Shown here piece by piece: positions 1 to 38,803 of a stretch of 64,000 nucleotides of DNA. The position numbers were made by a program, and so were the translations under genes. The number at the start of each line of letters is the position of its first letter. The first letter of the stretch is position 1. Under the pieces are notes generated by a model. The model had not been told where the DNA came from and made no database searches. It saw only the letters and a list, made by a program, of their open reading frames with translations. The stretch covers positions 77,500,001 through 77,564,000 of the forward strand of contig NW_027266264.1 in the NCBI RefSeq assembly GCF_022045235.1, read 5' to 3'. This stretch comes from Haliotis cracherodii. Taxonomy: Eukaryota.

Positions 1-221
1 TAGGTGCTTCTCACGTATAAAGAATGCCGACATTTGCATTTTGGTAAATGTCATCGTGGACAGAGAGTGTTGGATACTACAGAAGACTAATGGTAAACAT
101 TGTTTGTGTGTTACCGAAGGCACACGATCAGGTGGCTATTATATATGAATATGTGACCTTTGTTATGGAACATTAATTGCCAACTTCTGTTGTTGTGTAT
201 TTCCAGACTACGTGCATGTCG

Positions 222-470
222 CTTTGTTTTCTTGTTTGTTTGTTTAACGCCGCACTCGACAATATTTCAGCTAAATTACGGCGGTCTGTAAATATTCCAG
301 TCTGGACCAGACAATCCAGTGATTGACACTATGAGCATCGATCTATGCAATCGGGATACAATAACATACATCACCAAGTCAGCAAGCCTGACCACCCGAT
401 CCCGTTAGTCACCTCTTAAAGCAAGCATGGGTTGCTGAAGACTTATATTCTAAACCGGATGGTCACGGAT
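222..470 (-). mobile_element. SINE-like interspersed repeat (one copy per array unit; same family at ~30310, ~44275, ~44975, ~61500)
   Basis: On the minus strand it reads ...gactaacgggatcgggtggtcagg...ctggtccagac...gagtgcggcgttaaacaaacaaac, with an (AAAC)n tail. Dispersed copies occur outside the array. Confidence 0.8.
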
Positions 471-1047
471 CCGGTCTGCAGGGACGAAAGTTCAACACTA
501 TAAGTTGATCAATGTCATTGAGGAATATACATATCTGAACCTCCATAATGCATTCAAACAACTTTCACGTGCGAATGAATGACACTTTTTCAGAATCCTA
601 CGAAATTTCTGTCAATAACAGGTACTCGGTGCCACATGCTTGTCGTAAGAGCTGACTTATGAAGGCGACCAGATGTTTATTGTGTGTGACCTGACTGATT
701 GTGCGTCACCCGTGCCGCATGGTTTTGTGCCTCTGCCATGGTGTAATTTGACAAAGGCTGACTGTAGCGTTAAACAACACTCTCTCATTCACCCACTCAT
801 TCGCTCATGCCAGTAAACTAGTATACGCGTTTCTCTTTCATTTTGATGATTTATAACTCACTGTTCCGATACAAACTCTCTTAATAACATTTGTTTCCTT
901 TTGTAACATAGCCCCAACACTACTATGAATCAAAAACGTAAGACATTGTTTCAATGATTGTGTTTAATGTGACATATTTCAAACCGGATACAATAAATAA
1001 TGTACATATTGATGATGCAGATGAATTGTGACACTGGAGCGACAACC

Positions 1048-1586
1048 TTAGTAGTAGCCATATCCAATACCTGCAACAAAAAGAAGAGGATTTTGTTTAA
1101 GAATATTTTCCGTACAAAGTCATTTCTACGTCTAGTAATAATTTCTATATCCAATATATCGATAGGTTAGTTATGCTGCATGTGTCCAATTAAGGTGGAA
1201 AATAAGTTTGGTGTAATTAACTTATTTATAATCTGTCAAAGTATTAGGTATATGTGAGGGTCAATAATATTCTCGGCATGATTGTATTTGCATTTACCTT
1301 TTCCGAAACCTCCGATTCCTCCGTAAAGTCCTCCTAATCCGTAGCCTCCGTATAGACCACCCATTCCATAGCCTCCGTATAGACCACCCATTCCGTAGCC
1401 TCCGTACAGTCCTCCCAATCCGTACCCTCCGTACAGACCTCCCATTCCGTAGCCTCCGTACAGACCACCCATTCCGTAGCCTCCGTAAACACCACCCGTT
1501 CCGAAGCCTCCGTGCAGACCATAGCTCACAGGCTCAGCAAAGGCAGCGACAGCCAGACAGGCAACAAGGGCGATAACTTTCATCAT
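1048..1586 (-). CDS. Secreted Gly/Tyr-rich repeat protein, copy 1 (103 aa; coding exons 1586-1298 and 1070-1048)
   Basis: Signal peptide MMKVIALVACLAVAAFA, then six 9-aa GG[L/V]YGGYG[M/L] repeats. Donor AAG|GTAAAT at 1297 and acceptor TTTTGTTGCAG| at 1071 join in frame to give ...GGFGKGIGYGYY*. ATTAAA at 963-968. This copy has GTGGVY where the others have GKGGLY. Confidence 0.9.
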
Positions 1587-1925
1587 TTTGGAAGGCTGAA
1601 AAGGAGTTTTTCATTCATTATTCAAGTCTGTAAGAAATTCCGTTTCTGTACCAACTTGTGGTCGCTATTCTACACTTTTTTTATTTGGTTGGTTTAAGTA
1701 GAACTTTATCTGAGAAACATGTGTTGTCAGATTTGAACTAGAGTTGGTTGATTTGAAAACTACAAACACATTTGGAGGATTCAATCAATGTTACAAATAG
1801 TAATCAGTAAAAGTTTGAAATAGCATCACAGCAATAACTACTGACTAACACTCATAAAACAGCAACGTAAAATACAGCGTTCACAGGGACAGGCTGAATA
1901 CCCCGTAAAACACAAACCAACTGAT

Positions 1926-2015
1926 ACTCACAGAGTGTGTTGATTAGACTGGATCTAAACGTGAAGAGAGGCGACAGCAGTGATAGCTAGTGCTTGAAAA
2001 CAAGACGCTTATATA
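1926..2015 (-). promoter_or_regulatory. Core promoter and non-coding exon 1 of the Gly/Tyr-rich gene (repeated in every unit)
   Basis: TATATAAG at 2015-2008 and Inr-like TCACT about 32 nt downstream (A at 1981). GTGAGT donor at 1931-1926. Matching acceptor CTTTTCAG| at 1596, 9 nt before the ATG. Confidence 0.7.
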
Positions 2016-3460: not shown

Positions 3461-4620
3461 CACATTTCAAACTTTGTAACTGTCAATTCTTGCCATTACC
3501 AAAAACCTGTCGAGTCGTTTACTACTTTACCAAGAAAGCTTAATAATAATCCTTACTTTTACAGATGGCATAAAGGTTTAGGTGCTTCTCACGTATAAAG
3601 AATGCCGACATTTGCATTTTTGTAAATGTCATCGTGGACAGAGAGTGTTGGATACTACAGAAGACTAATGGTAAACATTTGTTTGTGTGTTACCGAAGGC
3701 ACACGATCAGGTGGCTATTATATATGAGTATGAGACCTTGTTATGGAACATTAATTGCCAACTTCTGTTGCTGTGTATTTCCAGACTACGTGCATGTCGC
3801 TTTGTTTGCTTGTTTGTTTAACGCCGCACTCGACAATATTTCAGCTAAATTACGGCGGTCTGTAAATATTCCAGTCTGGACCAGACAATCCAGTGATTGA
3901 CACTATGAGCATCGATCTATGCAATCGGGATACAATAACATACATCAACCAAGTCAGCAAGCCTGACCACCCGATCCCGTTAGTCACCTCTTAAAGCAAG
4001 CATGGGTTGCTGAAGACTTATATTCTAAACCGGATGGTCACGGATCCGGTCTGCAGGGACGAAAGTCAACACTATAAAGTTGATCAATGTCATTGAGGAA
4101 TATACATATCTGAACCTCCATAATGCATTCAAACAACTTTCACGTGCGAATGAATGACACTTTTCAGAATCCTACGAAATTTCTGTCAATAACAGGTACT
4201 CGGTGCCACATGCTTGTCGTAAGAGCTGACTTATGAAGGCGACCAGATGTTTATTGTGTGTGACCTGACTGATTGTGCGTCACCGTGCCGCATGGTTTTG
4301 TGCCTCTGCCATGGTGTAATTTGACAAAGGCTGACTGTAGCGTTAAACAACACTCTCTCATTCACCCACTCATTCGCTCATGCCAGTAAACTAGTATACG
4401 CGTTTCTCTTTCATTTTGATGATTTATATCTCACTGTTCCGATACAACTCTCTTAATAACATTTGTTTTCCTTTTGTAACATAGCCCCAACACTACTATG
4501 AATCAAAAACGTAAGACATTGTTTCAATGATTGTGTTTAATGTGACATATTTCAAACCGGATGCAATAAATAATGTACATATTGATGATGCAGATGAATT
4601 GTGACACTGGAGCGACAACC

Positions 4621-5156
4621 TTAGTAGTAGCCATATCCAATACCTGCAACAAAAAGAAGAGGATTTTGTTTAAGAATATTTTCCGTACAAAGTCATTTCT
4701 ACGTCTAGTAATAATTTCTATATCCAATATATCGATAGGTTAGTTATGCTGCATGTGTCCAATTAAGGTGGAAAATAAGTTTGGTGTAATTAACTTATTT
4801 ATAATCTGTCAAAGTATTAGGTATATGTGAGGGTCAATAATATTCTCGGCATGATTGTATTTGCATTTACCTTTTCCGAAACCTCCGATTCCTCCGTAAA
4901 GTCCTCCTAATCCGTAGCCTCCGTATAGACCACCCATTCCATAGCCTCCGTATAGACCACCCATTCCGTAGCCTCCGTACAGTCCTCCCAATCCGTAACC
5001 TCCGTACAGACCTCCCATTCCGTAGCCTCCGTACAAACCACCCATTCCGTAGCCTCCGTACAGACCACCCTTTCCGAAGCCTCCGTGCAGACCATAGCTC
5101 ACAGGCTCAGCAAAGGCAGCGACAGCCAGACAGGCAACAAGGGCGATAACTTTCAT
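4621..5156 (-). CDS. Secreted Gly/Tyr-rich repeat protein, copy 2 (102 aa; exons 5156-4871, 4643-4621)
   Basis: Same structure as copy 1. The first ATG is ATA here, so the protein starts MKVIAL. Confidence 0.9.
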
Positions 5157-8100
5157 TATTTTGGAAGGCTGAAAAGGAGTTTTCATTCATTATTCAAGTC
5201 TGTAAGAAAATCCGTTTCTGTACCAACTTGTGGTCGCAATTCTACACTTTTTTTATTTGGTTGGTTTAAGTAGAACTTTATCTGAGAAACATGTGTTGTC
5301 AGATTTGAACTAGAGTTGGTTGATTTGAAAACTACAAACACATTTGGAGGATTCAATCAATGTTACAAATAGTAATCAGTAAAAGTTTGAAATAGCATCA
5401 CAGCAATAACTACTGACTAACACTCATAAAACAGCAAGGTAAAATACAGCGTTCACAGGGACAGGCTGAATACCCCGTAAAACACAAACCAACTGATACT
5501 CACAGAGTGTGTTGATTAGACTGGATCTAAACGCGAAGAGAGGCGACAGCAGTGATAGCTAGTGCTTGAAAACAAGACGCTTATATACACCTGTATTTGG
5601 TCCACACCCGGAACTGACTAATTACAAGTATATTATCTAATGCAGCACCAATTTGCAACACCTTTTAAGAATCATTGCTGATATGAATTTCGTTTCCCTA
5701 TGCCCCCCAGGGACTATGTCCAATGCAATGTATGTGTGTAGGTGCGGGCGAATGATTAGGGAAGTAATTACATCACTGACAAATGACCCGTGATGAAATT
5801 GCGTCGATATGCGTAGATTCGTGTATAAATACCGTTACAGATGAGCATAGCCAGTGTTTTCCTATGTGGTCTGTGAAAAAACAATTCTATCACAATGACC
5901 AAGTAACGGGTATTGTTATAATTGTAATGATAAAAGACAGTGTGTAATTCATTTCCCCTCCTAGATGGTTGCTCTATAAAGTAATATCTCTTAAAGGAAA
6001 GTGTTCCAAAACATACATGGAGAGCAGGTTATCTTCCAAACATGGTGTTTCGATCCATTTTACCACCATTCTTTTCCGACATGTGTATGTATGATATATA
6101 TCCATGGCTTTCCTAAAAGCTTATAACTTTCCCCATTTCTAGGCATCGGTTTGGGATGGGTCGTTCTTGCTGCGCTGTGGATCCTTATTTTTGATATTCA
6201 TCTCACCTCTAAAATTTAAATAATGATTCGCTGACTTACATCGTATCTGCTCCTAATCATAAATTTCTTAATTTAAAACCAACCNNNNNNNNNNNNNNNN
6301 NNNNNNNNNNNNNNNNNNNNNNNNNNNNNNNNNNNNNNNNNNNNNNNNNNNNNNNNNNNNNNNNNNNNNNNNNNNNNNNNNNNNNNNNNNNNNNNNNNNN
6401 NNNNNNNNNNNNNNNNNNNNNNNNNNNNNNNNNNNNNACATTGTTGAAACTATGGAACGACAAAGAGTCACCATATACTTTTGCATAGCCCATGGTATAC
6501 TTTTATTAAGAACAACCTTGACAAACGAACATTCTACTCATCATTTCATTAAGGCATCCAAGCCCTATATATTTCCTATCAATTCATTTATTTATACTTC
6601 ACTATCTGGATGATAACTGCAAATGATAATTTTATTTAATGTAATGATGCTCCATGTTACGGTCATGAAGAAAAGTCAGTGCAGATTTAATGTTCACATT
6701 TCAGCTGTGACTTTTCACGGACGCCTCTGGTAACACGGTTAAAAAAACCTGTTGAAACAGTTCCTGTTAAAGAACAGATCTCAATGTATTTCATATGTAG
6801 TGTGATCTACAAATGGAACCTGCATTTCATAGAAAGAAATATATCATTGATTACAATGAAACAACATCGGAGCTCTAAAAGGGTCTTCCTGTATTATTAA
6901 TACTGAAAAAGAGGAATGTGCAGTAGGGAGTATGGCTAATCAAGGAGTTGTATGTAAAAAGGATACAGGAAAAGGATAAATGTAGGATGATAACTAAAGC
7001 TACGGAATGGGTTGACTATGCAGCTACAGAATGGTACGACTGTAGGGGGGCACATTTCAAACTTTGTAACTGTCAAGTCTTGCCATTACCAAAAACCTGT
7101 CGAGTCGTTTACTACTTTACCAAGAAAGCTTAATAATAATCCTTACTTTTACAGATGGCATAAAGGTTTAGGTGCTTCTCACGTATAAAGAATGCCGACA
7201 TTTGCATTTTTGTAAATGTCATCGTGGACAGAGAGTGTTGGATACTACAGAAGACTAATGGTAAACATTTGTTTGTGTGTTACCGAAGGCACACGATCAG
7301 GTGGCTATTATATATGAGTATGTGACCTTGTTATGGAACATTAATTGCCAACTTCTGTTGCTGTGTATTTCCAGACTACGTGCATGTCGCTTTGTTTGCT
7401 TGTTTGTTTAACGCCGCACTCGACAATATTTCAGCTAAATTACGGCGGTCTGTAAATATTCCAGTCTGGACCAGACAATCCAGTGATTGACACTATGAGC
7501 ATCGATCTATGCAATCGGGATACAATAACATACATCAACCAAGTCAGCAAGCCTGACCACCCGATCCCGTTAGTCACCTCTTAAAGCAAGCATGGGTTGC
7601 TGAAGACTTATATTCTAAACCGGATGGTCACGGATCCGGTCTGCAGGGACGAAAGTCAACACTATAAAGTTGAACAATGTCATTGAGGAATATACATATC
7701 TGAACCTCCATAATGCATTCAAACAACTTTCACGTGCGAATGAATGACACTTTTCAGAATCCTACGAAATTTCTGTCAATAACAGGTACTCGGTGCCACA
7801 TGCTTGTCGTAAGAGCTGACTTATGAAGGCGACCAGATGTTTATTGTGTGTGACCTGACTGATTGTGCGTCACCGTGCCGCATGGTTTTGTGCCTCTGCC
7901 ATGGTGTAATTTGACAAAGGCTGACTGTAGCGTTAAACAACACTCTCTCATTCACCCACTCATTCGCTCATGCCAGTAAACTAGTATACGCGTTTCTCTT
8001 TCATTTTGATGATTTATATCTCACTGTTCCGATACAACTCTCTTAATAACATTTGTTTTCCTTTTGTAACATAGCCCCAACACTACTATGAATCAAAAAA

Positions 8101-8211
8101 CGTAAGACATTGTTTCAATGATTGTGTTTAATGTGACATATTTCAAACCGGATGCAATAAATAATGTACATATTGATGATGCAGATGAATTGTGACACTG
8201 GAGCGACAACC

Positions 8212-8747
8212 TTAGTAGTAGCCATATCCAATACCTGCAACAAAAAGAAGAGGATTTTGTTTAAGAATATTTTCCGTACAAAGTCATTTCTACGTCTAGT
8301 AATAATTTCTATATCCAATATATCGATAGGTTAGTTATGCTGCATGTGTCCAATTAAGGTGGAAAATAAGTTTGGTGTAATTAACTTATTTATAATCTGT
8401 CAAAGTATTAGGTATATGTGAGGGTCAATAATATTCTCGGCATGATTGTATTTGCATTTACCTTTTCCGAAACCTCCGATTCCTCCGTAAAGTCCTCCTA
8501 ATCCGTAGCCTCCGTATAGACCACCCATTCCATAGCCTCCGTATAGACCACCCATTCCGTAGCCTCCGTACAGTCCTCCCAATCCGTAACCTCCGTACAG
8601 ACCTCCCATTCCGTAGCCTCCGTACAAACCACCCATTCCGTAGCCTCCGTACAGACCACCCTTTCCGAAGCCTCCGTGCAGACCATAGCTCACAGGCTCA
8701 GCAAAGGCAGCGACAGCCAGACAGGCAACAAGGGCGATAACTTTCAT
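8212..8747 (-). CDS. Secreted Gly/Tyr-rich repeat protein, copy 3 (102 aa; exons 8747-8462, 8234-8212)
   Basis: Intact frame and splice sites; single-ATG variant. Confidence 0.9.
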
Positions 8748-9889: not shown

Positions 9890-9943
<54 letters not shown>

Positions 9944-26617: not shown

Positions 26618-27583
26618 TTTGGAAGGCTGAAAAGGAGTTTTTCATTCATTATTCAAGTCTGTAAGAAAATCCGTTTCTGTACCAACTTGTGGTCGCTATT
26701 CTACACTTTTTTTATTTGGTTGGTTTAAGTAGAACTTTATCTGAGAAACATGTGTTGTCAGATTTGAACTAGAGTTGGTTGATTTGAAAACTACAAACAC
26801 ATTTGGAGGATTCAATCAATGTTACAAATAGTAATCAGTAAAAGTTTGAAATAGCATCACAGCAATAACTACTGACTAACACTCATAAAACAGCAAGGTA
26901 AAATACAGCGTTCACAGGGACAGGCTGAATACCCCGTAAAACACAAACCAACTGATACTCACAGAGTGTGTTGATTAGACTGGATCTAAACGTGAAGAGA
27001 GGCGACAGCAGTGATAGCTAGTGCTTGAAAACAAGACGCTTATATACACCTGTATTTGGTCCACACCCGGAACTGACTAATTACAAGTATATTATCTAAT
27101 GCAGCACCAATTTGCAACACCTTTTAAGAATCATTGCTGATATGAATTTCGTTTCCCTATGCCCCCCAGGGACTATGTCCAATGCAATGTATGTGTGTAG
27201 GTGCGGGCGAATGATTAGGGAAGTAATTACATCACTGACAAATGACCCGTGATGATATTGCGTCGATATGCGTAGATTCGTGTATAAATACCGTTACAGA
27301 TGAGCATAGCCAGTGTTTTCCTATGTGGTCTGTGAAAAAACAATTCTATCACAATGACCAAGTAACGGGTATTGTTATAATTGTAATGATAAAAGACAGT
27401 GTGTAATTCATTTCCCCTCCTAGATGGTTACTCTATAAAGTAATATCTCTTAAAGGAAAGTGTTCCAAAACATACATGGAGAGCAGGTTATCTTCCGAAC
27501 ATGGTGTTTCGATACATTCTACCACCATTCTTTTCCGACATGTGTATGTATGATATATATACATGGCTTTCCTAAAAGCTTAT

Positions 27584-30500
27584 AACACGTCCCATTTTAA
27601 TTCTGGAAACCCAAAAGTCCAGAAACTCTACGCTCTTTGCCCAGTCTCGGTTGAAGGTATTTACAAAATTAAACATGCCGTTTTCATGGGAACATACCAA
27701 GGATGAAAAAATGAAAAAAAAAATGTTTAAAAACTCGATATTTAGACTATGTCGCCCATGGGCCTGCCCATGGACGAAGTCTGGCCCATGGGTAGGCCCA
27801 TGGGCGAGAATATGTTCCTTTACTTAAAACTCATGATTTTGTTTCGCAAATACATTAAATGTATTTATTTAAGTATCATGACACAAAATTTAAGTCATTT
27901 TAACTTAATTCAACGATTTTATAGCGATATTGAAATATTTCGCCCATGGGCGAGAAAAAGGTTTGGCCCATGGGCGAGAATATGTTCCTGTACTTAAAAC
28001 TCATGATTTTGTTTCGCAAATACATTAAATGTATTCATTCAAGTATCATGACACAAAATTTAACTCATTTTAACTTAATTCAACGATTTTATAGCGATAT
28101 TGAAATATTTCGCCCATGGGCGAGAAAAAGGTTTGGCCCATGGGCAGGCCCATGGGCGAGAATATGTTCCTTTACTTAAAACTCATGATTTTGTTTCGCA
28201 AATACATCAAATGTATTCACTGAAGTATCATGACACAAAATTTAATGAAAAAATGAAAAAAAAATGTTCAAAAACTCAATATTTAGACTATGTCGCCCAT
28301 GGGCCTGCCCATGGGCGAAGTCTGGCCCATGGGTAGGCCCATGGGCGAGAATATGTTCCTTTACTCAAAACTCATGTTTTTGTTTCGCAAATACATTAAA
28401 TGTATTTATTTAAGTACCATGACACAAAATTTAACTCATTTTAACTTAATTCAACGATTTTATAGCGCTATTGAAATATTTCGCCCATGGGCGAGAAAAG
28501 GGTTTGTCCCATGGGCGAGAATATTTTCCTTTACTTAAAACTTATGATTTTGTTTCGCAAATACATGCAGGTGTTTCATGGCACATAATGAAACTCAATT
28601 TTACTCAATTCAGCTATTTTACAGATTTATTGAAATATTTCGCCCATGGGCGAGAAAAGGTTTTGCCTTCGAAATCCTTGATTATTATATCATGCCAGAG
28701 TTCTGAAATTCAGTGACAATGTTGCTGAACAGTAGAATCTGATGGACGTATTGTGCAGAACCTGTTTGACACTATGGGTTCCAGGACCACTAACACTCTG
28801 AGCTGAAAAAGTTTGGTCCTAACCGCACCCAACATCTTTAATGAACCCGGCCTTATCTCTCAAAACGTTTTGGCAGTTTATCATACGAATTCATGTGCGT
28901 GTACAACATTAAATTTTAGTTAGTTTCTATTTCATTTCCCATTTTATGACCCGTTGATACATCACACTGTGCAATTACGTGACAGGTACGCGTGCGCGTA
29001 TTTTAATGGAAAGAAACTATTCGTCTTTTATTGCATAACGTTTGGCTGAATATCTTACATTCTAACGAAATCTCGAAATAATTATTTAATTACAAGCAGT
29101 GTCGAACTGACCAGTAGGAATTATGTTTCAATGCGATTGAGGAAAACGTGAGTGAATATTGTGACACTAAAGCAACTTTTAACTGCATTGTCACTTTTGG
29201 TATGAAAATGGTAATAGTTAAGAAAAACGTAACAGCCTTCTTATGATAATTCGTGAATAAACAGTTATGCAGGTGTTGCTGTGGGCAAATACCTAGCCTG
29301 TACATGTATATTTTTGTGGATACATGTATTACATATTTTCGTTGATATGTGGATATATTAAGCACAAAGACACAAAAAGTTTATGAAAGATGAATTTGTG
29401 CCTTGATATATATATTCAACGCGAACGAAGCTTGTATTTTCTCCGCGATCCTGATGTGTATCATCGTTTAATTGGTCATTCATTAAAAGTATGTTGTGAG
29501 GCGATATCAAAGGAGCCGCTCAATATACACAGTGTCGTCCGTTTCGCGTGAACTACCACCCTACCCTGTCAGTAAGAGTTATGTAATCGGTACACAAATA
29601 TATTTGGTGCGATGTCAGTGTGGAAGGAGTTTGAATTACGTCCGCCAGTGGCCACAGAAAGTATAGTACAAATCAACAAGGCCAATGCCGTACTAATAAC
29701 CTAGTGACTCGCGTAACAACGGCTGTCAATATGTCTGCTACATCTACCATACCATCATCCCTGTCACAAATGGGGTATTAACGGCTTATTCAAAATATTA
29801 ATTGTAGAAATGTCGTTATCAGACTAACGTACGTCGTATTCAGTCCTCAACTGGATGTTACATTTCTGTTACCAGCCATGTTTGTGAAAATATTTACTAG
29901 ACATAAGATTTAAAGACTAATAAAATCAATTGTAAGACCGCATAGACAATAAAACCGAATAAAATATGTCTTGGTATCATCTCTTGTGTATTAGATGATG
30001 GCAATGACCGGAAATTTTATAACGTTAGATTAAGAAGGAGAAACATTAAAGTGTTTTACAATACTTGGAAACATGAGCAATAAGATGTAGCAACATAAAC
30101 ATGCATGGAATAGGGAAAAAGGATGAAAACAAATTGAAAAGGATTTTAATACAAAATTATCGAACTAAATAACTTGCCTGAACAGAAGGGGTACCCAAAT
30201 TTGTTTGACAGTTATTCGTGTGTTGTAGACTGTCGAATGGGACTCATGTGTGTACGTAGGGTACGCATATCTATTGCAAGTTTTAGTACTCATACACTTT
30301 CTCTTTTTGTGTTTTGTTTGTTTGTTAGTTGTATAACGCCACATTTAGCAATATTTCAGCTGTATGACGGCGGTCTGTAAATAATCGAGTCTGGACCAGA
30401 CAATCCAGTGATTGACATCATGTGCATCGATCCACGCAATTGGGATACGATGACATGCATCAACCAAGTCAGCGAGCCTGACCACCCGATCCCGGTAGTC

Positions 30501-33500
30501 GCTTCTTACGACAAGCGCTGTCGCCCTTTTACGCCAAGAATGGTTTGTTGAAGATCTTCACGGGTCTATTGAATGCAGGGATTTGTGTAAAGTCATTCAG
30601 ACAGCATACAATGCCAACTAAAAAATTATACTCAGTGTCTCCGCAAAGTAATATAGTACGGTACTTAGAGTACATGTGAGATTATACTCAGATTAGGGAG
30701 ATGTTTAATCCATATAACGTGTTATTATTCTACCTAACAATGTATTTAATGAAATGAATGCAAAACAAACTCAACGGCTAAAAGGTTTCATTGAAGAAAC
30801 TACCCCTAGTCTTGACTAATAAAACAACTGCAACCCGACACAGATTAAACGCAACTTACAAACACAATCATAATCTGGTTAGTCTGTATCACTCAACGAG
30901 GCCGCTTACTCTGCCCACAGTATGACAGTATTGGGCAGTTCAGTAATTAGGAGCCAAAACCAGGCAGGTACGCTGGTCACACTTGACTGGTCTGACTGAT
31001 GATTAGGTCGTCTGACAATTGGGAGTGAACCATAGCAGAAGTATCTGCGAAACTATTTGCTCCTTTTATGGGACCGATTAGTTTTATGACCATGGGCCCT
31101 CGGCACAAGCGTGGTGTTGGAAGACAAGTTATACATGTACATCCGATATGGTGACTGTTTTTTCGCTATTCATATTCTAAATACATTCATAATACCACAA
31201 CATTTTAGTACTCCTTGAAACTTTACAATCACTTCAATATGTACAATAGATTGAACGAGAACACTTGATATATTGCAGATTATTAAATCATTGTCTCTAT
31301 TATCAGCCGCTACGTTTGTATCGTTTGCATTGTACAAAGAAATGTTTTATCTGTCCTTTTGCAGATTTAGCCTCAGAATGTGCTCATTCGAATTAGGAAC
31401 GAAAATAATTGCTTATCATTAGTATATATGATACAGTTAAAAGTTACTTGTACACTGTAGACGTATTCACTTTAAAGTCGCATACGACCTTCGCGAGCGA
31501 GTTGAATGATCCAGGTTAATTGGAACGAAGTCTAGAAAGGGTTATAAAGTTTTGTATTTGGTAATGTGTAGGTTAGTTAAATATAATTTTTTAAATTCCT
31601 TTTATTTCAATTTCAAAAACATAACTATGCGCTTAAAAACAGAGCTGACTTGATGGGAGATAGCCACCTCAGATTGTCTGTTGGGCACGGTTTTAACCTT
31701 ACTGTGTCCTCACCCTGGTGTTGTTACCGTTGTTATAAGGGATTAAGAGCTACGGCTCATTGCATTTTTGGTTACAGTCTGTATCACTAAAGTGGACATG
31801 TGCAGGTGAACTCCGTTCAATTAGTATATGAAATGCCCCAAAATGTGAACTCCAGACAATAATAACCTGAGGGTAAATCCACGTGCGTCTGCCTTTCCCC
31901 TCGTTCACCTTCGAATCCTTGGATTATTATATCATGCCGGAGTTCTGAAATTCAGTGACAATGTTGCTGAACAGTAGAATCTGATGGACGTTTTGTGCAG
32001 AACCAGAAAAAGTTTGGTCCTAACCACACCCAACATCTACAAGTTTGTAAGATACAGTGATGTAAGCATCTTCTAAAATCTTCTAAAAATATAATAAAAT
32101 ACAAAACTCTCTGCCGTATTTTTTTGTGGAAATCATTCGATCAAGTAAAAAATGACTGCGTGACAAGACGAATCAACTATTTATACCCGATAAAAGAAAC
32201 TGCCGTATTTTAGGAACAGTGCTATAACAAGACATTTGAAATTTCTAACAAGCAGATACATTAGATACAGTGACTAGACTACAGGTACGTAATCCGTATC
32301 AATCAAAGGTGTAAAAAAACTGAAAATCATATCTGTCGGAGACCTACCAAATTACCAAGTTTTATCATTACTATATTTATTACAATGCAAATACTTTAGT
32401 GATACATTTTTTAGAGGAGAGGGCATACACACAAGTATATTGCTTCCGTGTGTGAATGCAGGTTGTACTTGGTATCTCAGTTCTCAGTTTCATACCGGTT
32501 GTATAACTGAATTTGTATATGGAACCATGCGTACAGCATGACAATTACTTGCTATTCGTCAGTTTACAACACACATAACACGGTCAAACAATTTTAGGCA
32601 CTGCTTTTGCGAGTTATTTAGTACTATAATGTTTTATTAAAATCTATTTCAATTTGTTTTCACCATTTTCCCTATTGACAGTCGTTGTTTCGTGCGTCAC
32701 TAGGTAATTAGTACGGATTGACCTTGTTTATTGTTTCTATACTTTGAGGATTTCTGTGGCAAGTGGCGGACGTAATTCAAACTCCTTCCGCACTGACACC
32801 GCATCAAATATATTTGTGTACCGATTACATAACTCTAATGGACAGAGTGGGGTGGTAGTTCACCGGACGACACTGTGTATATTGGGCGGCTCCTTTGATA
32901 TCTCCTCCAAACACACGTTTATTGAATGACTCCATTAAACGATGATACACATCTCGATGAATATATCAAGGCACTAATTCATCTTTCATAAACATTTTTT
33001 TGTCTTTGTGCTTAATATATCCACATATCAACGAACATTTGTAAAACATGTATCCTAAAAAAAAAAACATTTTCAGGCTAGGTATTTGCCCACAGCAACA
33101 CCTGCATAACTGTTTATTCACGCGTGGTGTGGTAGATCGTAATTGACCGAGAGCAGGTATTGTAGAATCACCTGTAAATAAGGCCGACACTGTAATTAGA
33201 TACAACGTACTAATGAGAATTATCATAAGAAGGCTGTTGTTTTTTCTGAACTGTTACCATTTTCATACCAAAAGTGACAATGCAGTTAAAAGTTGCTTTA
33301 GTGTCACAATATTCACTCACGTTTTCCTCAATCGCATTGAAACATAATTCCCACTGGTCAGTTCGAAACCGCATGTAATTAAATAATTATTTCGAGATTT
33401 CGTTAGAATCTAAGATATTCAGCCAAACGTTATGCAATAAAAGACGAATAGTTTTTTTCATTAAAATACGCGCACGCGTACCTGTATATTGCATACCTAG

Positions 33501-34385
33501 TGTCACGTAATTGCCCAGTGTGATGTATCAACGGGACATAAAATGGGAAATGAAATAGAAACTAACTAAAATTTAATGTTGTGGAAAATAACTCCAATGA
33601 ACTGGAGTACACGCACATGAATTCGTATGATAAACTGTCAAAACGTTTTGAGAGGTAAGGCCGGGTTCATTAAAGATCGCTACAATATGTAAAACAGGTG
33701 AAATTTATAGAACTAGAGGAAACATCCAGCCAAATGCCCTTTTAAATAGTAATGTAATGATATAATATAAAGTATATTTCACACGATACAATATACTTTG
33801 CAAACAGTTAGTTGATGCTTGAAAGGGACTGACGAAAACATGGGCGAAATATTTTAATAACGCCGTAAAATCCTTGAATTAAGTTAAAAAGAGTTTAATT
33901 TTGTGTCATGATACTTGAATGAATACATTAAATGTATTTGCGAAACAAAAACATGAGTTTTAAGTAAAGGAACATATTCTCGCCCATGGGCCAAACCTTT
34001 TTCTCGCCCATGGGCGAAATATTTCAATATCGCTAAAAAACAGTTGAATTAAGTTAAAATGACTTAAATTTTGTGTCATGATACTTAAATAAATACATTT
34101 AATGTATTTGCGAAACAAAATCATGAGTTTTAAGTAAAGGAACATATTCTCGCCCATGGGCCTGCCCATGGGCCTACCCATGGGCCAGACTTCGCCCATG
34201 GGCAGGCCCATGGGCGACATAGTCTAAATATTGAGTTTTTAAACATTTTTTTTTTCATTTTTTCATCCTTGGTATGTTCCCATGAAAACGGCATGTTTAA
34301 TTTTGTAAATACCTTTAACCGAGACTGGGCAAAGAGCGTAGAGTTTCTGGACTTTTGGGTTTCCAGAATTAAAATGGGACGTGTT
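27584..34385. mobile_element. Non-autonomous foldback-type DNA transposon, 6802 bp, long TIRs, 4-bp TSD TTAT
   Basis: Empty site in other units is aaagc-TTAT-aactttcc. Here it reads aaagcTTAT[aacacgtcccattttaattctgg...ccagaattaaaatgggacgtgtt]TTATaactttcc. The termini are near-perfect inverted repeats over ~500 bp with GCCCATGGGC subrepeats. There is no transposase-sized ORF. Confidence 0.93.
30310..30567 (-). mobile_element. SINE-like repeat nested inside the foldback element
   Basis: Same family as 222-470 (gtctggaccagacaatccagtgattgac...caaccaagtcagcgagcctgaccacccgatccc). Confidence 0.8.
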
Positions 34386-36473
34386 TTATAACTTTCCCCA
34401 TTTCTAGGCATCGGTTTGGGATGGGTCGTTCTTGCTGCGCTGTGGATCCTTATTTTTGATATTCATCTCACCTCTGAAATTTAAATAATGATTCGCTGAC
34501 TTACATCGTATCTGCTCCTAATCATAAATTTCTTAATTTAAAACCANNNNNNNNNNNNNNNNNNNNNNNNNNNNNNNNNNNNNNNNNNNNNNNNNNNNNN
34601 NNNNNNNNNNNNNNNNNNNNNNNNNNNNNNNNNNNNNNNNNNNNNNNNNNNNNNNNNNNNNNNNNNNNNNNNNNNNNNNNNNNNNNNNNNNNNNNNNNNN
34701 NACATTGTTGAAACTATGGAACGACAAAGAGTCACCATATACTTTTGCATAGCCCATGGTATACTTTTATTAAGAACAACCTTGACAAACGAACATTCTA
34801 CTCATCATTTCATTAAGGCATCCAAGCCCTATATATTTCCTATCAATTCATTTATTTATACTTCACTATCTGGATGATAACTGCAAATGATAATTATATT
34901 TAATGTAATGATGCTCCATGTTACGGTCATGAAGAAAAGTCAGTGCAGATTTAATGTTCACATTTCAGCTGTGACTCTTCACGCACGCCTCTGGTAACAC
35001 GGTTAAAAAAACCTGTTGAAACAGTTCCTGTTAAAGAACAGATCTCAATGTATTTCATATGTAGTGTGATCTACAAATGGAACCTGCATTTCATAGAAAG
35101 AAATATATCATTGATTACAATGAAACAACATCGGAGCTCTGAAAGGGTCTTCCTGTATTATTAATACTGAAAAAGAGGAATGTGCAGTGGGGAGTATGGC
35201 TAATCAAGGAGTTGTATGTAAAGAGGATACAGGAAAAGGATAAATGTAAGATGATAACTAAAGCTACGGAATGGGTTGACTATGCAGCTACAGAATGGTA
35301 CGACTGTTGGGGGGCACATTTCAAACTTTGTAACTGTCAATTCTTGCCATTACCAAAAACCTGTCGAGTCGTTTACTACTTTACCAGGAAAGCTTAATAA
35401 TAATCCTTACTTTTACAGATGGCATAAAGGTTTAGGTGCTTCTCACGTATAAAGAATGCCGACATTTGCATTTTTGTAAATGTCATCGTGGACAGAGAGT
35501 GTTGGATACTACAGAAGACTAATGGTAAACATTTGTTTGTGTGTTACCGAAGGCACACGATCAGGTGGCTCTTATATATGAATATGTGACCTTGTTATGG
35601 AACATTAATTGCCAACTTCTGTTGTGTATTTCCAGACTACGTGCATGTCGCTTTGTTTGCTTGTTTGTTTAACGCCGCACTCGACAATATTTCAGCTAAA
35701 TTACGGCGGTCTGTAAATATTCCAGTCTGGACCAGACAATCCAGTGATTGACACTATGAGCATCGATCTATGCAATCGGGATACAATAACATACATCAAC
35801 CAAGTCAGCAAGCCTGACCACCCGATCCCGTTAGTCGCCTCTTACAGCAAGCATGGGTTGCTGAAGACTTATATTCTAAACCGGATGGTCACGGATCCGG
35901 TCTGCAGGGACGAAAGTCAACACTATAAAGTTGATCAATGTCATTGAGGAATATACATATCTGAACCTCCATAATGCATTCAAACAACTTTCACGTGCGA
36001 ATGAATGACACTTTTTCAGAATCCTACGAAATTTCTGTCAATAACAGGTACTCGGTGCCACATGCTTGTCGTAAGAGCTGACTTATGAAGGCGACCAGAT
36101 GTTTATTGTGTGTGACCTGACTGATTGTGCGTCACCGTTGCCGCATGGTTTTGTGCCTCTGCCATGGTGTAATTTGACAAAGGCTGACTGTAGCGTTAAA
36201 CAACACTCTCTCATTCACCCACTCATTCGCTCATGCCAGTAAACTAGTATACGCGTTTCTCTTTCATTTTGATGATTTATATCTCACTGTTCCGATACAA
36301 CTCTCTTAATAACATTTGTTTTCCTTTTGTAACATAGCCCCAACACTACTATGAATAAAAAACGTAAGACATTGTTTCAATGATTGTGTTTAATATGACA
36401 TATTTCAAACCGGATACAATAAATTATGTACATATTGATGATGCAGATGAATTGTGACACTGGAGCGACAACC

Positions 36474-37012
36474 TTAGTAGTAGCCATATCCAATACCTGC
36501 AACAAAAAGAAGAGTATTTTGTTTAAGAATATTTTCCGTACAAAGTCATTTCTACGTCTTGTAATAATTTCTATATCCAATATATCGATAGGTTAGTTAT
36601 GCTGCATGTGTCCAATTAAGGTGGAAAATAAGTTTGGTGTAATTAACTTATTTATAATCTGTCAAAGTATTAGGTATATGTGAGGGTCAATAATATTCTC
36701 GGCATGATTGTATTTGCATTTACCTTTTCCGAAACCTCCGATTCCTCCGTAAAGTCCTCCTAATCCGTAGCCTCCGTATAGACCACCCATTCCATAGCCT
36801 CCGTATAGACCACCCATTCCGTAGCCTCCGTACAGTCCTCCCAATCCGTAACCTCCGTACAGACCTCCCATTCCGTAGCCTCCGTACAGACCACCCATTC
36901 CGTAGCCTCCGTACAGACCACCCTTTCCGAAGCCTCCGTGCAGACCATAGCTCACAGGCTCAGCAAAGGCAGCGACAGCCAGACAGGCAACAAGGGCGAT
37001 AACTTTCATCAT
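36474..37012 (-). CDS. Secreted Gly/Tyr-rich repeat protein, copy 9, terminal copy (103 aa; exons 37012-36724, 36496-36474)
   Basis: Intact frame and splice sites; its upstream flank runs into unique sequence at 38288. Confidence 0.9.
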
Positions 37013-38148
37013 TTTGGAAGGCTGAAAAGGAGTTTTTCATTCATTATTCAAGTCTGTAAGAAAATCCGTTTCTGTACCAACTTGTGGTCGCTATTCTACA
37101 CTTTTTTTATTTGGTTGGTTTAAGTAGAACTTTATCTGAGAAACATGTGTTGTCATATTTGAACTAGAGTTGGTTGATTTGAAAACTACAAACACATTTG
37201 GAGGATTCAATCAATGTTACAAATAGTAATCAGTAAAAGTTTGAAATAGCATCACAGCAATAACTACTGACTAACACTCATAAAACAGCAAGGTAAAATA
37301 CAGCGTTCACAGGGACAGGCTGAATACCCCGTAAAACACAAACCAACTGATACTCACAGAGTGTGTTGATTAGACTGGATCTAAACGTGAAGAGAGGCGA
37401 CAGCAGTGATAGCTAGTGCTTGAAAACAAGACGCTTATATACACCAGTATTTGGTCCACACCCGGAACTGACTAATTTCAAGTATATTATCTAATGCAGC
37501 ACCAATTTGCAACACCTTTTAAGAATCATTGCTGATATGAATTTCGTTTCCCTTGCCCCCCAGGGACTATGTCCAATGCAATGTATGTGTGTAGGTGCGG
37601 GCGAATGATTAGGGAAGTAATTACATCACTGACAAATGACCCGTGATGAAATTACGTCGATATGCGTAGATTCGTGTATAAATACCGTTACAGATGAGCA
37701 TAGCCAGTGTTTTCCTATGTGGTCTGTGAAAAAACAATTCTATCACAATGACCAAGTAACGGGTATTGTTATAATTGTAATGATAAAAGACAGTGTGTAA
37801 TTCATTTCCCCTCCTAGATGGTTACTCTATAAAGTAATATCTCTTAAAGGAAAGTGTTCCAAAACATACATGGAGAGCAGGTTATCTTCCGAACATGGTG
37901 TTTCGATACATTCTACCACCATTCTTTTCCGACATGTGTATGTATGATATATATACATGGCTTTCCTAAAAGCTTATAACTTTCCCCATTTCTAGGCATC
38001 GGTTTGGGATGGGTCGTTCTTGCTGCGCTGTGGATCCTTATTTTTGATATTCATCTCACCTCTGAAATTTAAATAATGATTCGCTGACTTACATCGTATC
38101 TGCTCCTAATCATAAATTTCTTAATTTAAAACCAACCACAGACTTATT

Positions 38149-38205
<57 letters not shown>

Positions 38206-38803
38206 TGCTAAAACATTCTTGAAACTATAGAACGACAAGGAGTCACCATGTACTTTTGCATAGCCCATGGTATACTTTTATTAAGAATGTAATTGGTTGC
38301 TTGTTCCTTGGTTTCATTGATAGATTGAGGACACATGTTCAATAATGATTGTGCAAGCTATGATTTGATTATATTGTGATAGGTTTGGATAGTTATATAA
38401 CTATGTCTTCCCAGTGATAATGAAAGGCTAAATATGTTTCAGTATATACTCCTGAACTGCTTATCCAAAATTGTGATGTGTCTACACAGATAAATTGCAA
38501 TAGGTTCCATTTGCTAAAGAACTGTGGTCGGTGTGTTGAGTATCCTGTGGCTGGACATAGAGCTTGGGTTTCGGGCTACCCATAGTTTGTTTTCTCTTTG
38601 CATGTACAAGGATAGTTGAATGTATGTTTATTGAACAATGGATATGACGATCCACTGAAATATTTGTCACTGGTTGTGACCTGGCTGTCTGTGTGTCATC
38701 GTACCATCGTGACTAAGTTTATTGGCATTTACCCCTTCCGACAACAAAACTATATCAGAATAAAATCTATCAGAAAATGTAACTGGTCACGGTTTAAAAT
38801 GTT

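What the first reader, a model, noticed from the sequence alone, without database searches (positions are those of the whole stretch)
1..38287. Highly homogenised tandem amplification (at least 9 copies) of a small secreted Gly/Tyr-repeat protein gene
Seen: whole 3.58 kb units, including introns, old SINEs and spacers, are near-identical, and seven copies (2-5, 7-9) encode the same mature protein. Known: histone, rDNA and silkmoth chorion arrays use tandem copies to meet bulk or burst demand for a product. Inference: this is a recent dosage amplification of a structural extracellular protein (shell organic layer, periostracum, operculum, radula, egg coat or mucus) or a Gly-rich defence peptide. 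It is probably copy-number variable, and is the best candidate here for an undescribed system.
Basis: partly seen in the sequence, partly recalled or inferred. Interest (0 to 1): 0.78.

Follow-up and report, generated by a model that had tools for sequence, protein, structure and literature searches.

The report
Abalone glycine-tyrosine protein gene array
A black abalone chromosome carries at least 17 near-identical head-to-tail copies of a small gene for a secreted glycine- and tyrosine-rich protein, probably a cross-linkable building material of the outer shell; it belongs to a gene family already known from abalone shell-forming tissue.

Summary
The window has 9 units of 3.55-3.59 kb, 98.5-100% identical to unit 2. 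The array runs 27.4 kb further left, giving at least 17 units, with a 100-N scaffold gap inside unit 6.

Each unit has a minus-strand gene. I infer its model from sequence only: a TATA box, a short non-coding exon, a 286-nt coding exon and a 23-nt last exon. The predicted 86-residue mature protein is 51% Gly and 20% Tyr, with six GYG(M/L)GGLYG repeats.

- **Intact copies:** 10 of 17 coding exons are intact (8 of 9 in the window). The 7 frameshifted ones lie partly in units full of homopolymer indels, so some may be consensus errors.
- **N runs:** they lie in the spacer, not in the gene.
- **Sister array:** 14 direct copies plus 1 inverted copy sit 1.04 Mb away. Its product is 94% identical, and NCBI calls it 'shematrin-like protein 2'.
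- **Wider family:** more arrays exist on other scaffolds. This scan had already noted the family on other DNA of this genome.

This is a new member of a known kind, not an undescribed system.

The parts
1..38287 (-). Window part of the tandem array: 9 units of 3.55-3.59 kb. Unit starts are about 22, 3600, 7190, 10755, 14342, 17927, 21507, 25059 and 35454. The last unit is truncated at unit position 2913. The array continues 27.4 kb to the left, outside the window.
963..2015 (-). Gene copy 1, from TATA box to ATTAAA. Coding exon 1298-1583. The last exon starts at 1070. The product differs from the common one by K29T and L32V.
4536..5587 (-). Gene copy 2, the reference model. TATATAAG 5587-5580; inferred non-coding exon about 5555-5504; donor GTGAGT at 5503; intron 1 5503-5169; coding exon 5168-4871 with ATG at 5156; intron 2 4870-4644 (227 nt); last exon from 4643; stop TAA 4623-4621; ATTAAA 4541-4536.
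   Evidence: The model is inferred from sequence; no RNA evidence was obtained.
8127..9178 (-). Gene copy 3. Coding exon 8462-8747. Product is the common one.
11692..12744 (-). Gene copy 4. Coding exon 12027-12312. Product is the common one.
15278..16329 (-). Gene copy 5. Coding exon 15613-15898. Product is the common one.
18862..19913 (-). Gene copy 6. Coding exon 19197-19484 is 288 nt and frameshifted by several small indels. Its unit has 10 indel events, 7 of them 1-bp indels next to the same base. It is either a pseudogene or a consensus error.
22442..23494 (-). Gene copy 7. Coding exon 22777-23062. Product is the common one.
25994..27046 (-). Gene copy 8. Coding exon 26329-26614. Product is the common one. 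The foldback element lies about 540 bp upstream of its TATA box.
36389..37441 (-). Gene copy 9. Coding exon 36724-37009. Product is the common one. The 3' limit is approximate.
27581..34388 (.). 6.8-kb foldback-type insertion in the spacer of unit 8. It has long inverted arms with 170-bp internal tandem repeats and no ORF of 120 aa or more. Unit positions 2522-2528 appear on both sides, consistent with a 7-bp target duplication.

Best explanation
This is a real tandem array of at least 17 units of 3.6 kb on the largest scaffold of the black abalone (Haliotis cracherodii) assembly.

**The gene.** Each unit carries a small TATA-box gene. It encodes a 16-residue signal peptide and an 86-residue mature protein that is almost uncharged and has no predicted fold. 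The protein is built from GYG(M/L)GGLYG nonapeptides and ends in GYGYY.

**The family.** The gene belongs to an abalone family of secreted Gly/Tyr/Leu/Met-repeat proteins that sit in several internally homogenised arrays.

**Inferred mechanism.**
- Many identical promoters and genes together supply large amounts of one product to a small population of secretory cells, most likely at the mantle edge.
- Outside the cell, the many Tyr residues next to Gly are oxidised by a peroxidase or tyrosinase. This cross-links the protein into an insoluble organic layer, either periostracum or the framework of the outer shell.
- Unequal crossing-over and gene conversion keep neighbouring units alike.

**Shown:** the array, the gene anatomy, the protein composition, the family, purifying selection between arrays, and units that are far more alike within an array than between arrays.

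**Inferred:** transcription, splicing, tissue, cross-linking and the dosage rationale.
For: **Array.** There are 9 units in the window and 8 to its left. The 15 aligned units are all distinct, with 3-90 substitutions. Near neighbours are more alike: 1.05-1.12% at lags 1-2 against about 1.7% at lags 5-12 (Mantel r 0.27; 94 of 5000 permutations reach it).

**Genome identity.** NCBI places P0003 in H. cracherodii on a contig of that length.

**Gene.**
- 10 of 17 coding exons are open, and 8 of 17 give one identical product.
- TATATAAG and a GT(G/A)AGT donor are conserved in 16 of 17 units here and in 14 of 14 direct sister units. They lie in the best-conserved non-coding block, which is 91.8% identical over 429 nt.
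- NCBI's sister-array model P0153 ends in GKGIGYGYY, as my exon 2 / exon 3 splice predicts. P0003 and P0154 end in a shorter ...GIGYY.

**Selection.** Between the two arrays dS is 0.147, dN 0.039 and dN/dS 0.27. Intron 2 is 82.8% identical.

**Protein.** Gly is 51.2%, Tyr 19.8%, Leu 11.6% and Met 4.7%, with 2 Lys, 1 Glu and 1 His. AlphaFold gives mean pLDDT 50.4, with residues 28-95 below 50. Pfam finds 0 families.

**Family.** 85 matches at E <= 1e-5 fall in this array, the sister array, C1:60.01 and 79.15 Mb, C80:48.7, 51.0-51.4 and 56.2-56.6 Mb, and C2:36.81 Mb. Most start at residue 3, inside the signal peptide.

**Analogy.**
- Has-tsfgr1 is 114 aa, with a 17-residue signal peptide, Gly/Leu/Tyr repeats and a C-terminal Tyr. 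It is expressed at the shell-field edge and the outer mantle fold (PMC2034539, passages).
- Lymnaea secreted Gly/Tyr-rich proteins are expressed next to a peroxidase zone. Tyr flanked by Gly is favoured for cross-linking (PMC6007483, passages).
Against: - Three runs of the same species guessed to be RNA hold next to none of the gene's words (X22-X24). No gene model of this array turned up in three protein searches.
- **Broken copies.** 7 of 17 coding exons are frameshifted, so part of the array may be dead.
- **Weak link to Has-tsfgr1.** It rests on architecture and composition only. The GGYGLGL motif is not in this gene. It is encoded at 7 other places (C18:9.19-9.24 Mb and C80:35.43 Mb; control 1), which I could not fetch.
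- **No detectable homology to bivalve proteins.** BLASTP finds no alignment to the Mya protein P0002.
- **Shell proteomics.** In the passages that my six search terms retrieved from the H. laevigata shell proteome paper, none described a Gly/Tyr-repeat protein of this kind, and 'tyrosine', 'GGY' and 'tsfgr' had no hits (PMC6003135). Its supplementary tables were not seen.
- **Diversity inside the array.** The coding exon (0.83%) is no less diverse than intron 2 (0.78%), so within-array identity alone shows no selection.
Confidence: 0.55

Rival explanations
1. Same gene and same array, but the protein builds another secreted structure: radula or jaw, larval operculum, egg coat, or pedal adhesive or mucus. 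In this reading it works as a suckerin-M2-like Gly/Tyr/Leu network polymer rather than as shell matrix.
For: The repeat is made of GYG and GGLY, the sub-motifs listed for the amorphous M2 module of squid sucker-ring-tooth proteins (PMC11931252, passages). The motif GGLYGG occurs in 14 papers, 13 listed, and by their titles most deal with squid ring teeth or materials derived from them. No tissue data were obtained here. The protein-atlas look-alikes are arthropod cuticle proteins, but weakly (0.77-0.78).
Against: The only abalone proteins of this style with published expression are mantle and shell-field products. The Ala/His-rich M1 module that defines suckerins is absent: the mature protein has 0 Ala and 1 His.
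Confidence: 0.2
2. The product is a glycine/tyrosine-rich defence peptide, comparable to nematode NLP-29/31-type peptides or crustacean armadillidins. It would be amplified for a fast, strong response.
For: One of the two database hits is a Mya arenaria protein that NCBI names 'neuropeptide-like protein 31'. The motif GGLYGG also occurs in a paper on isopod Gly-rich antimicrobial peptides (PMC7017220, search listing only). The protein is small and secreted and sits in a multi-copy cluster.
Against: The net charge is only about +1 (2 Lys, 1 Glu, 1 His). There are no dibasic processing sites and no amidation signal. The homology to P0002 cannot be shown. The resemblance is compositional.
Confidence: 0.12
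3. Much of the array is an assembly product or a graveyard. Either the true copy number is far lower because repeats were over-expanded or haplotypes strung together, or most copies are dead and only the sister array functions.
For: The array contains a 100-N scaffold join. Units 5, 8 and 14 carry 25, 30 and 10 indel events in 2.7 kb, mostly 1-bp indels next to the same base, which points to poor local consensus. 7 of 17 coding exons are frameshifted, whereas all 15 sister-array coding exons are open. Read depth could not be examined.
Against: - The 15 aligned units are all different, with at least 3 substitutions between any two. Even if both haplotypes had been chained, at least 8 copies per haplotype are needed (inference).
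- A foldback element sits in one unit only.
- The HiFi read N50 of 16 kb spans about 4 units.
- 8 of 9 window copies are intact, and their promoters are conserved.
Confidence: 0.08

Closest known systems
Has-tsfgr1 and the GGYGLGL-repeat proteins of the Haliotis asinina mantle secretome (Jackson et al. 2006 and 2007; PMC1676022, PMC2034539; passages read)
   Same: Same genus. Both are small secreted proteins (114 aa against about 102 aa) with a signal peptide of 16-17 residues. Both mature proteins are over 50% Gly with Leu and Tyr repeats, and both have a short C-terminal motif ending in Tyr.
   Different: The repeat unit differs: GYG(M/L)GGLYG here, GGYGLGL there. That motif is not encoded in this gene but at 7 other places in this genome. 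Genomic organisation was not reported for Has-tsfgr1 in the passages I read.
Shematrins of pearl oysters (Pinctada). NCBI's name for the sister array's products is 'shematrin-like protein 2'.
   Same: Both are Gly-rich repetitive secreted proteins whose C-terminus ends in Tyr. Shematrins are expressed at the mantle edge and found in the prismatic layer, and their genes are tandemly arranged: five genes on two scaffolds.
   Different: - No sequence homology can be shown.
- There are far more copies here, and they are far more alike: at least 17 plus 15 within 1.1 Mb.
- I recall the basic residues before the terminal Tyr of shematrins from memory, not from a call. They are absent here.
- The shell location of this protein is unknown.
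Lymnaea stagnalis Lstag-sfc-6, -7 and -8 (Herlitze et al. 2018, PMC6007483; passages read)
   Same: These are secreted gastropod proteins made of low-complexity Gly/Tyr/Leu-rich repeats, with Tyr flanked by Gly. They are proposed substrates of a mantle peroxidase that tans the periostracum. This is the working model I adopt.
   Different: The Lymnaea proteins are basic and also rich in Asn. No homology was tested, and no array was reported in the passages read.
Suckerins of squid sucker ring teeth (PMC11931252; passages read)
   Same: The M2 module sub-motifs GYG and GGLY make up nearly the whole mature protein here.
   Different: The Ala/His-rich, Pro-flanked M1 beta-sheet module is absent, so the protein is not a suckerin. 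Lineage and tissue also differ.
Homogenised tandem gene arrays made for bulk product (histone, rDNA and silkmoth chorion arrays; established knowledge, not tested by a call)
   Same: Head-to-tail units include their spacers. Within-array identity is far above between-array identity, products are identical, and neighbouring units are more alike than distant ones.
   Different: Copy number here is modest. 7 of 17 copies may be broken. High or burst expression has not been shown.

Membership tests
Abalone secreted Gly/Tyr/Leu/Met-repeat family (sister array annotated by NCBI as 'shematrin-like protein 2') | Shared signal peptide and repeat region detectable by sequence | tested here: met
   The exon product is 93-94% identical to the 15 sister-array copies and to P0003 (E 2.1e-99). 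Matches on C80 and C2 start at residue 3, inside the signal peptide.
Abalone secreted Gly/Tyr/Leu/Met-repeat family (sister array annotated by NCBI as 'shematrin-like protein 2') | Same gene structure: 286-nt coding exon, intron of about 228 nt, and a tiny last exon encoding the Tyr-ending tail | tested here: met
   In 14 of 14 direct sister units the exon is 286 nt and the intron 229 nt; here they are 286 and 227 nt. The tail is GIGYY or GIGYGYY.
Has-tsfgr1-type proteins (H. asinina) | GGYGLGL repeat motif | tested here: not met
   The repeats here are GYG(M/L)GGLYG. The GGYGLGLG-coding pattern is found at 7 other places in the genome and none in this array.
Has-tsfgr1-type proteins (H. asinina) | Signal peptide, mature protein over 50% Gly, and a C-terminal motif ending in Tyr | tested here: met
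   Predicted 16-residue signal peptide (cleavage after AFA by the -3/-1 rule; no predictor was run), 51.2% Gly, and a tail ending in GYGYY. Compared with the description.
Has-tsfgr1-type proteins (H. asinina) | Expression at the shell-field edge and the anterior outer mantle fold | not testable with these tools
No RNA holder is on record.
Shematrins (Pinctada) | Detectable sequence homology to a shematrin | not tested
   No shematrin sequence was compared. Neither the word-indexed search (2 hits) nor the full HMMER search gave a named shematrin; the latter's other hits are long Gly-rich repeat proteins, of which I read three, and that library carries no names. NCBI's name is automatic.
Shematrins (Pinctada) | Gly-rich repeats and a C-terminus ending in Tyr | tested here: met
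   The feature is as described in PMC2034539.
Shematrins (Pinctada) | Presence in the prismatic shell layer | not testable with these tools
   This needs proteomics. The supplementary tables of shell proteome papers were not seen.
Suckerins | Alternating P[M1]P[M2] modules, with M1 rich in Ala and His and forming beta-sheets | tested here: not met
   The mature protein has 0 Ala, 1 His and 1 Pro. Only M2-like sequence is present.
Gly/Tyr-rich antimicrobial peptides (NLP-29/31 type) | Processing into short cationic peptides, and induction by infection | tested here: inconclusive
   There are no dibasic sites and the net charge is about +1. Induction is not testable here. These defining features are recalled from memory, not taken from a call.
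Concertedly evolving tandem gene arrays | Units, spacers included, are much more alike within an array than between paralogous arrays | tested here: met
   Substitution distance is 0.1-3.4% within the array, against about 80% DNA identity, dS 0.147 and 82.8% intron identity between arrays.
Concertedly evolving tandem gene arrays | Copy-number variation between individuals | not testable with these tools

The most novel reading that the evidence does not exclude
These arrays may encode the long-sought bulk precursor of gastropod periostracum or outer-shell scleroprotein. In this reading it is a pure 'M2-only' Gly/Tyr/Leu polymer that cross-links through its roughly 17 tyrosines. Its supply would be set by gene dosage spread over several homogenised arrays. 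The two neighbouring arrays would make two fixed isoforms, one with an M-M-L register and one with all Met, that assemble together. Copy number would then be a heritable, variable control on shell growth or toughness. The family would also be a gastropod counterpart, convergent or anciently shared, of the amorphous module of cephalopod suckerins.
Probability: 0.15. Interest if true: 0.6.

Novelty: new member of a known kind. Interest (0 to 1): 0.35.

Why it matters
If the genes are active, this locus and its sister arrays are a clean example of how a mollusc supplies a low-complexity structural protein. It would do so through many identical TATA-box genes rather than one long repetitive gene.

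The locus also offers defined, short, Tyr-rich sequences for testing peroxidase or tyrosinase tanning of shell organic layers. For a critically endangered species, a copy-number-variable shell-protein locus could serve as a marker of shell growth traits.

There are two practical lessons for annotation. NCBI's models of the sister array fuse 2 to 7 units into chimeric 'spidroin-like' proteins. No model for this array turned up in my searches, so family counts based on annotation will be wrong.

Tried and rejected
- **Pfam on the exon product:** 0 families.
- **Word-indexed protein searches:** 2 weak hits; then no hit with signal-peptide words; then only P0003. No model of this array was found.
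- **Full HMMER search:** 654 hits at E <= 0.001. Apart from P0003, the listed ones are 354-5005 aa long with multiple matched stretches. The three I read (P0004, P0024, P0035) are long Gly-X-repeat proteins and were rejected as compositional matches.
- **BLASTP against the Mya protein:** no alignment.
- **Protein atlas:** weak arthropod cuticle look-alikes at 0.77-0.78, a lead only.
- **AlphaFold on the single sequence:** no fold, so no fold search was run.
- **ARAGORN and Rfam on a unit:** nothing found, so 'SINE' is unconfirmed.
- **NCBI 'linker' exon:** it lies 0.9-1.03 kb upstream of the ATG here, at only 49-52% identity in 8 of the 9 window matches (73% over a 22-residue fragment in the ninth). 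I treat it as a read-through or model artefact, not the normal first exon, because a conserved TATA box and donor lie nearer the gene.
- **GGYGLGL pattern:** two consecutive units gave 0 matches; one unit gave 7 places elsewhere.
- **Literature that gave nothing on this family:** the abalone copy-number paper PMC9936805 (find: no hit for shematrin, glycine, spidroin, tandem or mantle); 'shematrin-like' with abalone (5 papers, none on abalone genes by title); 'tsfgr1' (1 paper, the original).
- **Not in print, as far as these searches go:** a description of this array or of tandem arrays of this family in Haliotis.
- **Supplementary files** were not opened. The H. laevigata and H. asinina shell proteome tables and the EST files may hold family members.
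- **Joining exons:** I searched the spliced model exon by exon only and left the joined protein out of all calls. The composition adds residue counts without joining.
- **A script timed out** and was redone with BLAST.

Full report
**What is there**

TRF finds a 27-bp repeat (7.6 copies) at nine places in the window, spaced 3552-3591 bp apart, with one spacing of 10,395 bp. BLAST of one unit (3600-7190) against the window gives nine collinear units. Their left blocks (unit positions 1-2685) are 98.55-100% identical and their right blocks (2839-3591) 98.47-100%.

The long spacing is caused by a 6.8-kb insertion at 27581-34388. It has long inverted arms (for example 225 nt at 98% and 336 nt at 96%), internal 170-bp tandem repeats and no ORF of 120 aa or more. 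Unit positions 2522-2528 are present on both sides of it.

**The array is larger than the finding**

The window is G000:C1:77500001-77564000. I fetched 200 kb to its left. The array continues to 27,378 bp before the window start, adding eight units at 96.2-98.5% identity to unit 2. It therefore has at least 17 units in 65.7 kb.

A 100-N run lies inside unit 6. This is a scaffold join within the array, so 17 is a lower bound.

**Which genome**

C1 is 89,134,964 bp long. That is exactly the largest scaffold of the black abalone assembly xgHalCrac1, which was made from PacBio HiFi reads at 37x with read N50 15,971 bp, assembled with hifiasm, with 52 gaps per Gbp (PMC9709981, passages). NCBI places the related protein P0003 in Haliotis cracherodii on a contig of that length.

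**The N runs (asked to be tested first)**

All six lie at the same unit position, between unit positions about 2685 and 2839. This is intergenic spacer, about 0.7 kb upstream of the TATA box and 1.1 kb upstream of the ATG of the gene on their low-coordinate side.

The letters on both sides align collinearly with the units that have no N there. Units with an N run have periods of 3573-3591 bp, against 3552-3565 bp without. No reading frame crosses them.

An assembly with about 52 gaps per Gbp is unlikely to hold six true gaps here, and the one gap I saw outside the window is exactly 100 N. So they are probably masks, but I cannot tell. I did not read the corresponding letters in other copies.

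**The gene**

It lies on the minus strand. In unit 2 the parts are:

| Part | Position in unit 2 |
|---|---|
| TATATAAG | 5587-5580 |
| GTGAGT donor | 5503 |
| Acceptor ...TTTTCAG | ends at 5169 |
| ATG | 5156 |
| Coding exon end (286 nt of coding sequence) | 4871 |
| Intron 2 | 227 nt |
| Last exon start | 4643 |
| Stop TAA | 4623-4621 |
| ATTAAA | 4541-4536 |

The last exon completes a Gly codon and adds IGYGYY before the stop.

The promoter and donor stretch is conserved in 16 of 17 units of this array; unit 6 gave no match, and its promoter position falls at the 100-N gap or in the unaligned stretch beside it. It is also conserved in 14 of 14 direct units of the sister array, where the donor reads GTAAGT. 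It lies inside the best-conserved non-coding block between the two arrays, 91.8% identical over 429 nt.

This model is inferred from sequence. I have no RNA evidence for it.

**Copies**

| Set | Coding exons open | Notes |
|---|---|---|
| Window (9 copies) | 8 | 7 give one identical product; copy 1 has K29T and L32V; copy 6 is frameshifted |
| Left of the window (8 copies) | 2 | 6 are frameshifted by small indels |
| Whole array (17 copies) | 10 | 8 of 17 give the identical product |

Among the upstream copies, two last exons end in TGA instead of TAA, one has an extra base, and one has lost the stop at that place.

Units 5, 8 and 14 carry 25, 30 and 10 indel events in about 2.7 kb. Of these, 17, 22 and 7 are single-base indels next to the same base. 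Most other units have 0-7. Units 5 to 8 surround the 100-N join. This pattern looks like poor local consensus rather than decay, so some of the frameshifts may be artefacts. Units 3 and 4 have few indels overall (5 and 4), and their frameshifts may be real. Only reads can settle this.

**Is the array real?**

The 15 units that I could align over the left block are all different from one another, by 3 to 90 substitutions, or 0.1-3.4%. Units 1 and 6 were left out because they are truncated.

There are close sets: units 10, 11 and 13 (0.1-0.2% apart); units 12 and 14 (0.4%); units 2 and 4 (0.1%). These suggest duplication of two-unit blocks. Units one or two steps apart differ by 1.05-1.12% on average, against about 1.7% at five to twelve steps (Mantel r 0.27; 94 of 5000 permutations reach it).

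Fifteen distinct variants cannot come from one or two true copies. Even if both haplotypes had been chained, at least eight copies per haplotype are needed; that is an inference. Read depth, the direct test, could not be done.

**The protein**

By the -3/-1 rule, the signal peptide is 16 residues, with cleavage after AFA (rule applied by eye; no predictor was run). The mature protein is 86 residues: Gly 51.2%, Tyr 19.8%, Leu 11.6%, Met 4.7%, with 2 Lys, no Arg, 1 Glu and 1 His.

It has six exact nonapeptides GYG(M/L)GGLYG in the order M-M-L-M-M-L. At DNA level, repeats three steps apart are the most alike (24-26 of 27 bases), so the protein is built from a doubled 81-bp block.

Pfam finds nothing. 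AlphaFold on the single sequence gives mean pLDDT 50.4, with only the signal peptide helical and residues 28-95 below 50.

**The family**

- **In this genome.** A six-frame search with the exon product gives 85 matches at E <= 1e-5 (150 of 1666 candidates were scored, so counts are lower bounds). They fall in:
  - this array;
  - a sister array at C1:76.40-76.46 Mb;
  - degenerate or longer relatives at C1:60.014-60.016 Mb and C1:79.145-79.156 Mb;
  - 15 matches between C80:51.289 and 51.395 Mb, mostly 3.99 kb apart;
  - further matches at C80:48.7, 51.03, 56.20-56.22 and 56.60 Mb;
  - four matches at C2:36.81-36.82 Mb.

  Most of the C80 and C2 matches begin at residue 3, inside the signal peptide, which is not low-complexity sequence. 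That supports true kinship.
- **The sister array.** I fetched it. It has 14 direct units on the opposite strand with a period of 4.05-4.19 kb. All have open 286-nt exons, and 13 of 14 give an identical product. There is also one inverted copy with one repeat fewer. Its product is 94% identical to this one and has Met in every repeat.
- **Divergence between the arrays.** The coding exon differs at 18 of 286 bases, with dS 0.147, dN 0.039 and dN/dS 0.27. Intron 2 is 82.8% identical (188 of 227), and the units overall are about 80% identical. So the coding sequence is under purifying selection. Each array is far more uniform inside than the two are to each other, through either concerted evolution or independent recent expansion. 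Inside this array, the exon (0.83% mean pairwise difference) is no less diverse than intron 2 (0.78%), and both are below the flanks (1.2-2.2%).
- **In the databases.** The full HMMER search of 1.84 billion representatives found one close relative, P0003 (E 2.1e-99, 93%). The remaining listed hits are 354-5005 aa long with multiple matched stretches; the three I read are long Gly-X-repeat proteins, which I reject as compositional.
- **NCBI's models.** P0003 and its two cluster mates are models XP_071095146.1, XP_071095156.1 and XP_071095135.1 of H. cracherodii, named 'shematrin-like protein 2' and 'spidroin-1-like'. Their sequences are chains of 2 to 7 sister-array units joined through an extra exon; the 979-aa model ends in GKGIGYGYY and the other two in a shorter ...GIGYY. 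That agrees with my last-exon splice, but the chaining looks like an annotation artefact.

**What is published**

- The H. asinina mantle EST study reports novel secreted ORFs with GGYGLGL repeats (PMC1676022, passages).
- The follow-up describes Has-tsfgr1 (PMC2034539, passages). It is 114 aa, with a 17-residue signal peptide, over 52% Gly, Gly/Leu/Tyr repeats and a C-terminal GYKGY likened to shematrins. [quoted passage not shown]
- This gene shares that architecture but not the repeat. The GGYGLGLG-coding pattern occurs at 7 places, none here: six at C18:9.19-9.24 Mb and one at C80:35.43 Mb, with 1 match for the reversed control. Two consecutive units gave 0 matches.
- Tandem arrangement of shell-matrix genes, including five shematrin genes on two scaffolds, is reported for Pinctada and noted for Lottia. 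The authors suggest that copy number raises transcript supply (PMC4759782, passages).
- A review describes shematrin and KRMP expansions and their high mantle expression (PMC4897951, passages).
- For Lymnaea, secreted Gly/Tyr/Asn/Leu-rich proteins are expressed in the mantle zone next to a peroxidase zone. Tyr flanked by Gly is said to favour peroxidase cross-linking (PMC6007483, passages). Here six Tyr sit in GYG and seven in LYG contexts.
- The motif GGLYGG is otherwise found mainly in squid ring-teeth papers, judging by titles (14 papers, 13 listed). Suckerins are defined by alternating Ala/His-rich M1 and Gly/Tyr/Leu-rich M2 modules (PMC11931252, passages). This protein has only M2-like sequence, so it is not a suckerin.

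**Expression**

None was shown. The run search listed 24 runs:

- Nine runs, all of the same organism label and guessed to be DNA, from four studies, hold at least half of the sampled words.
- Runs of two other organism labels hold 0.34-0.35.
- Six runs guessed to be RNA, from three further organism labels, hold 0.18-0.29. This would fit conserved exons, which make up about 41% of the stretch, but those runs may be DNA.
- Three runs of the same organism guessed to be RNA hold next to none.

This neither supports nor refutes transcription.

**Verdict**

It is wrong that this is an undescribed system.

This is a further array of an abalone gene family whose style of protein, likely site of synthesis and tandem genomics are in print. 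The same scan had already met the family on another scaffold (s1-823181); I checked that note only in part. Its claim of expression and of more than 100 genes is not verified here.

My best mechanism is bulk secretion from many identical TATA genes, followed by oxidative Tyr cross-linking into periostracum or outer-shell framework. It rests on analogy, and I hold it at about 0.55. The rivals are another secreted material (0.2), a defence peptide (0.12) and a largely artefactual or dead array (0.08).

Noticed in passing
window 27581-34388: 6.8-kb foldback-type element. It has long inverted arms, 170-bp internal tandem repeats, no ORF of 120 aa or more, and a likely 7-bp target duplication. It sits in one unit only, so it arrived after the amplification. 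It also holds a copy of the unit's dispersed repeat (30317-30508, 86%).
   Followed up: partly
G000:C1:76397000-76459500 (loci L021-L027): Sister array of 14 direct units plus one inverted unit (period 4.05-4.19 kb), on the opposite strand and 1.04 Mb away. All its coding exons are open, and its product has Met in every repeat. NCBI's gene models chain 2-7 of its units into 200-979-aa 'shematrin-like' and 'spidroin-1-like' proteins, which looks like an annotation artefact.
   Followed up: partly
G000:C18:9194707-9240663 and G000:C80:35432648-35432670: Seven places encode GGYGLGLG, the repeat of the published H. asinina Has-tsfgr1. The six on C18 are grouped at five positions spaced 10-12 kb apart, suggesting another tandem cluster. 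They could not be fetched.
   Followed up: no
G000:C80:51288855-51395102: Fifteen matches to the exon product, mostly 3.99 kb apart. This is another large array of the family on a different scaffold.
   Followed up: no
L028 (G000:C1:60014400-60016700) and L030 (G000:C1:79155400-79155981): At 60.01 Mb there is a long degenerate run of the same 27-bp coding repeat, with many in-frame stops. At 79.155 Mb there is an open frame of at least 193 aa made of related repeats. Both are family relatives outside arrays.
   Followed up: partly
left of the window, units 5-8 around the 100-N run (about 14 kb to 0.9 kb before window base 1), and window 17927-20608: These units carry 10-30 small indels per 2.7 kb, mostly single bases next to the same base. 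That is far above the assembly's stated indel quality and points to local consensus errors in the array near a contig join.
   Followed up: partly
window 41094-43886, minus strand: The neighbouring gene has BTB, BACK and PHR domains (Pfam E 2.7e-11, 2.8e-11 and 2.5e-27).
   Followed up: partly
window 45905-46247, 47139-49583 and 51922-56485: Three satellite-like tandem repeats lie to the right of the array: 35 bp x 9.9, 68 bp x 36, and 26 bp x 177. The last has a very strong AT skew (-0.58 to -0.63).
   Followed up: no
right flank of the array, within window 38288-41400: A dispersed repeat of about 575 bp has many copies (40 candidates scored of 10,207) at 85-93% identity on other scaffolds. 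The rest of this flank found only its own place among the scored candidates.
   Followed up: no
G000:C1:77564409-77564634 (just right of the window end): An inverted 226-bp fragment of the array unit (unit positions 2839-3065, 93%) lies 26 kb beyond the array's right end. It may be a trace of an old rearrangement at the array border.
   Followed up: no
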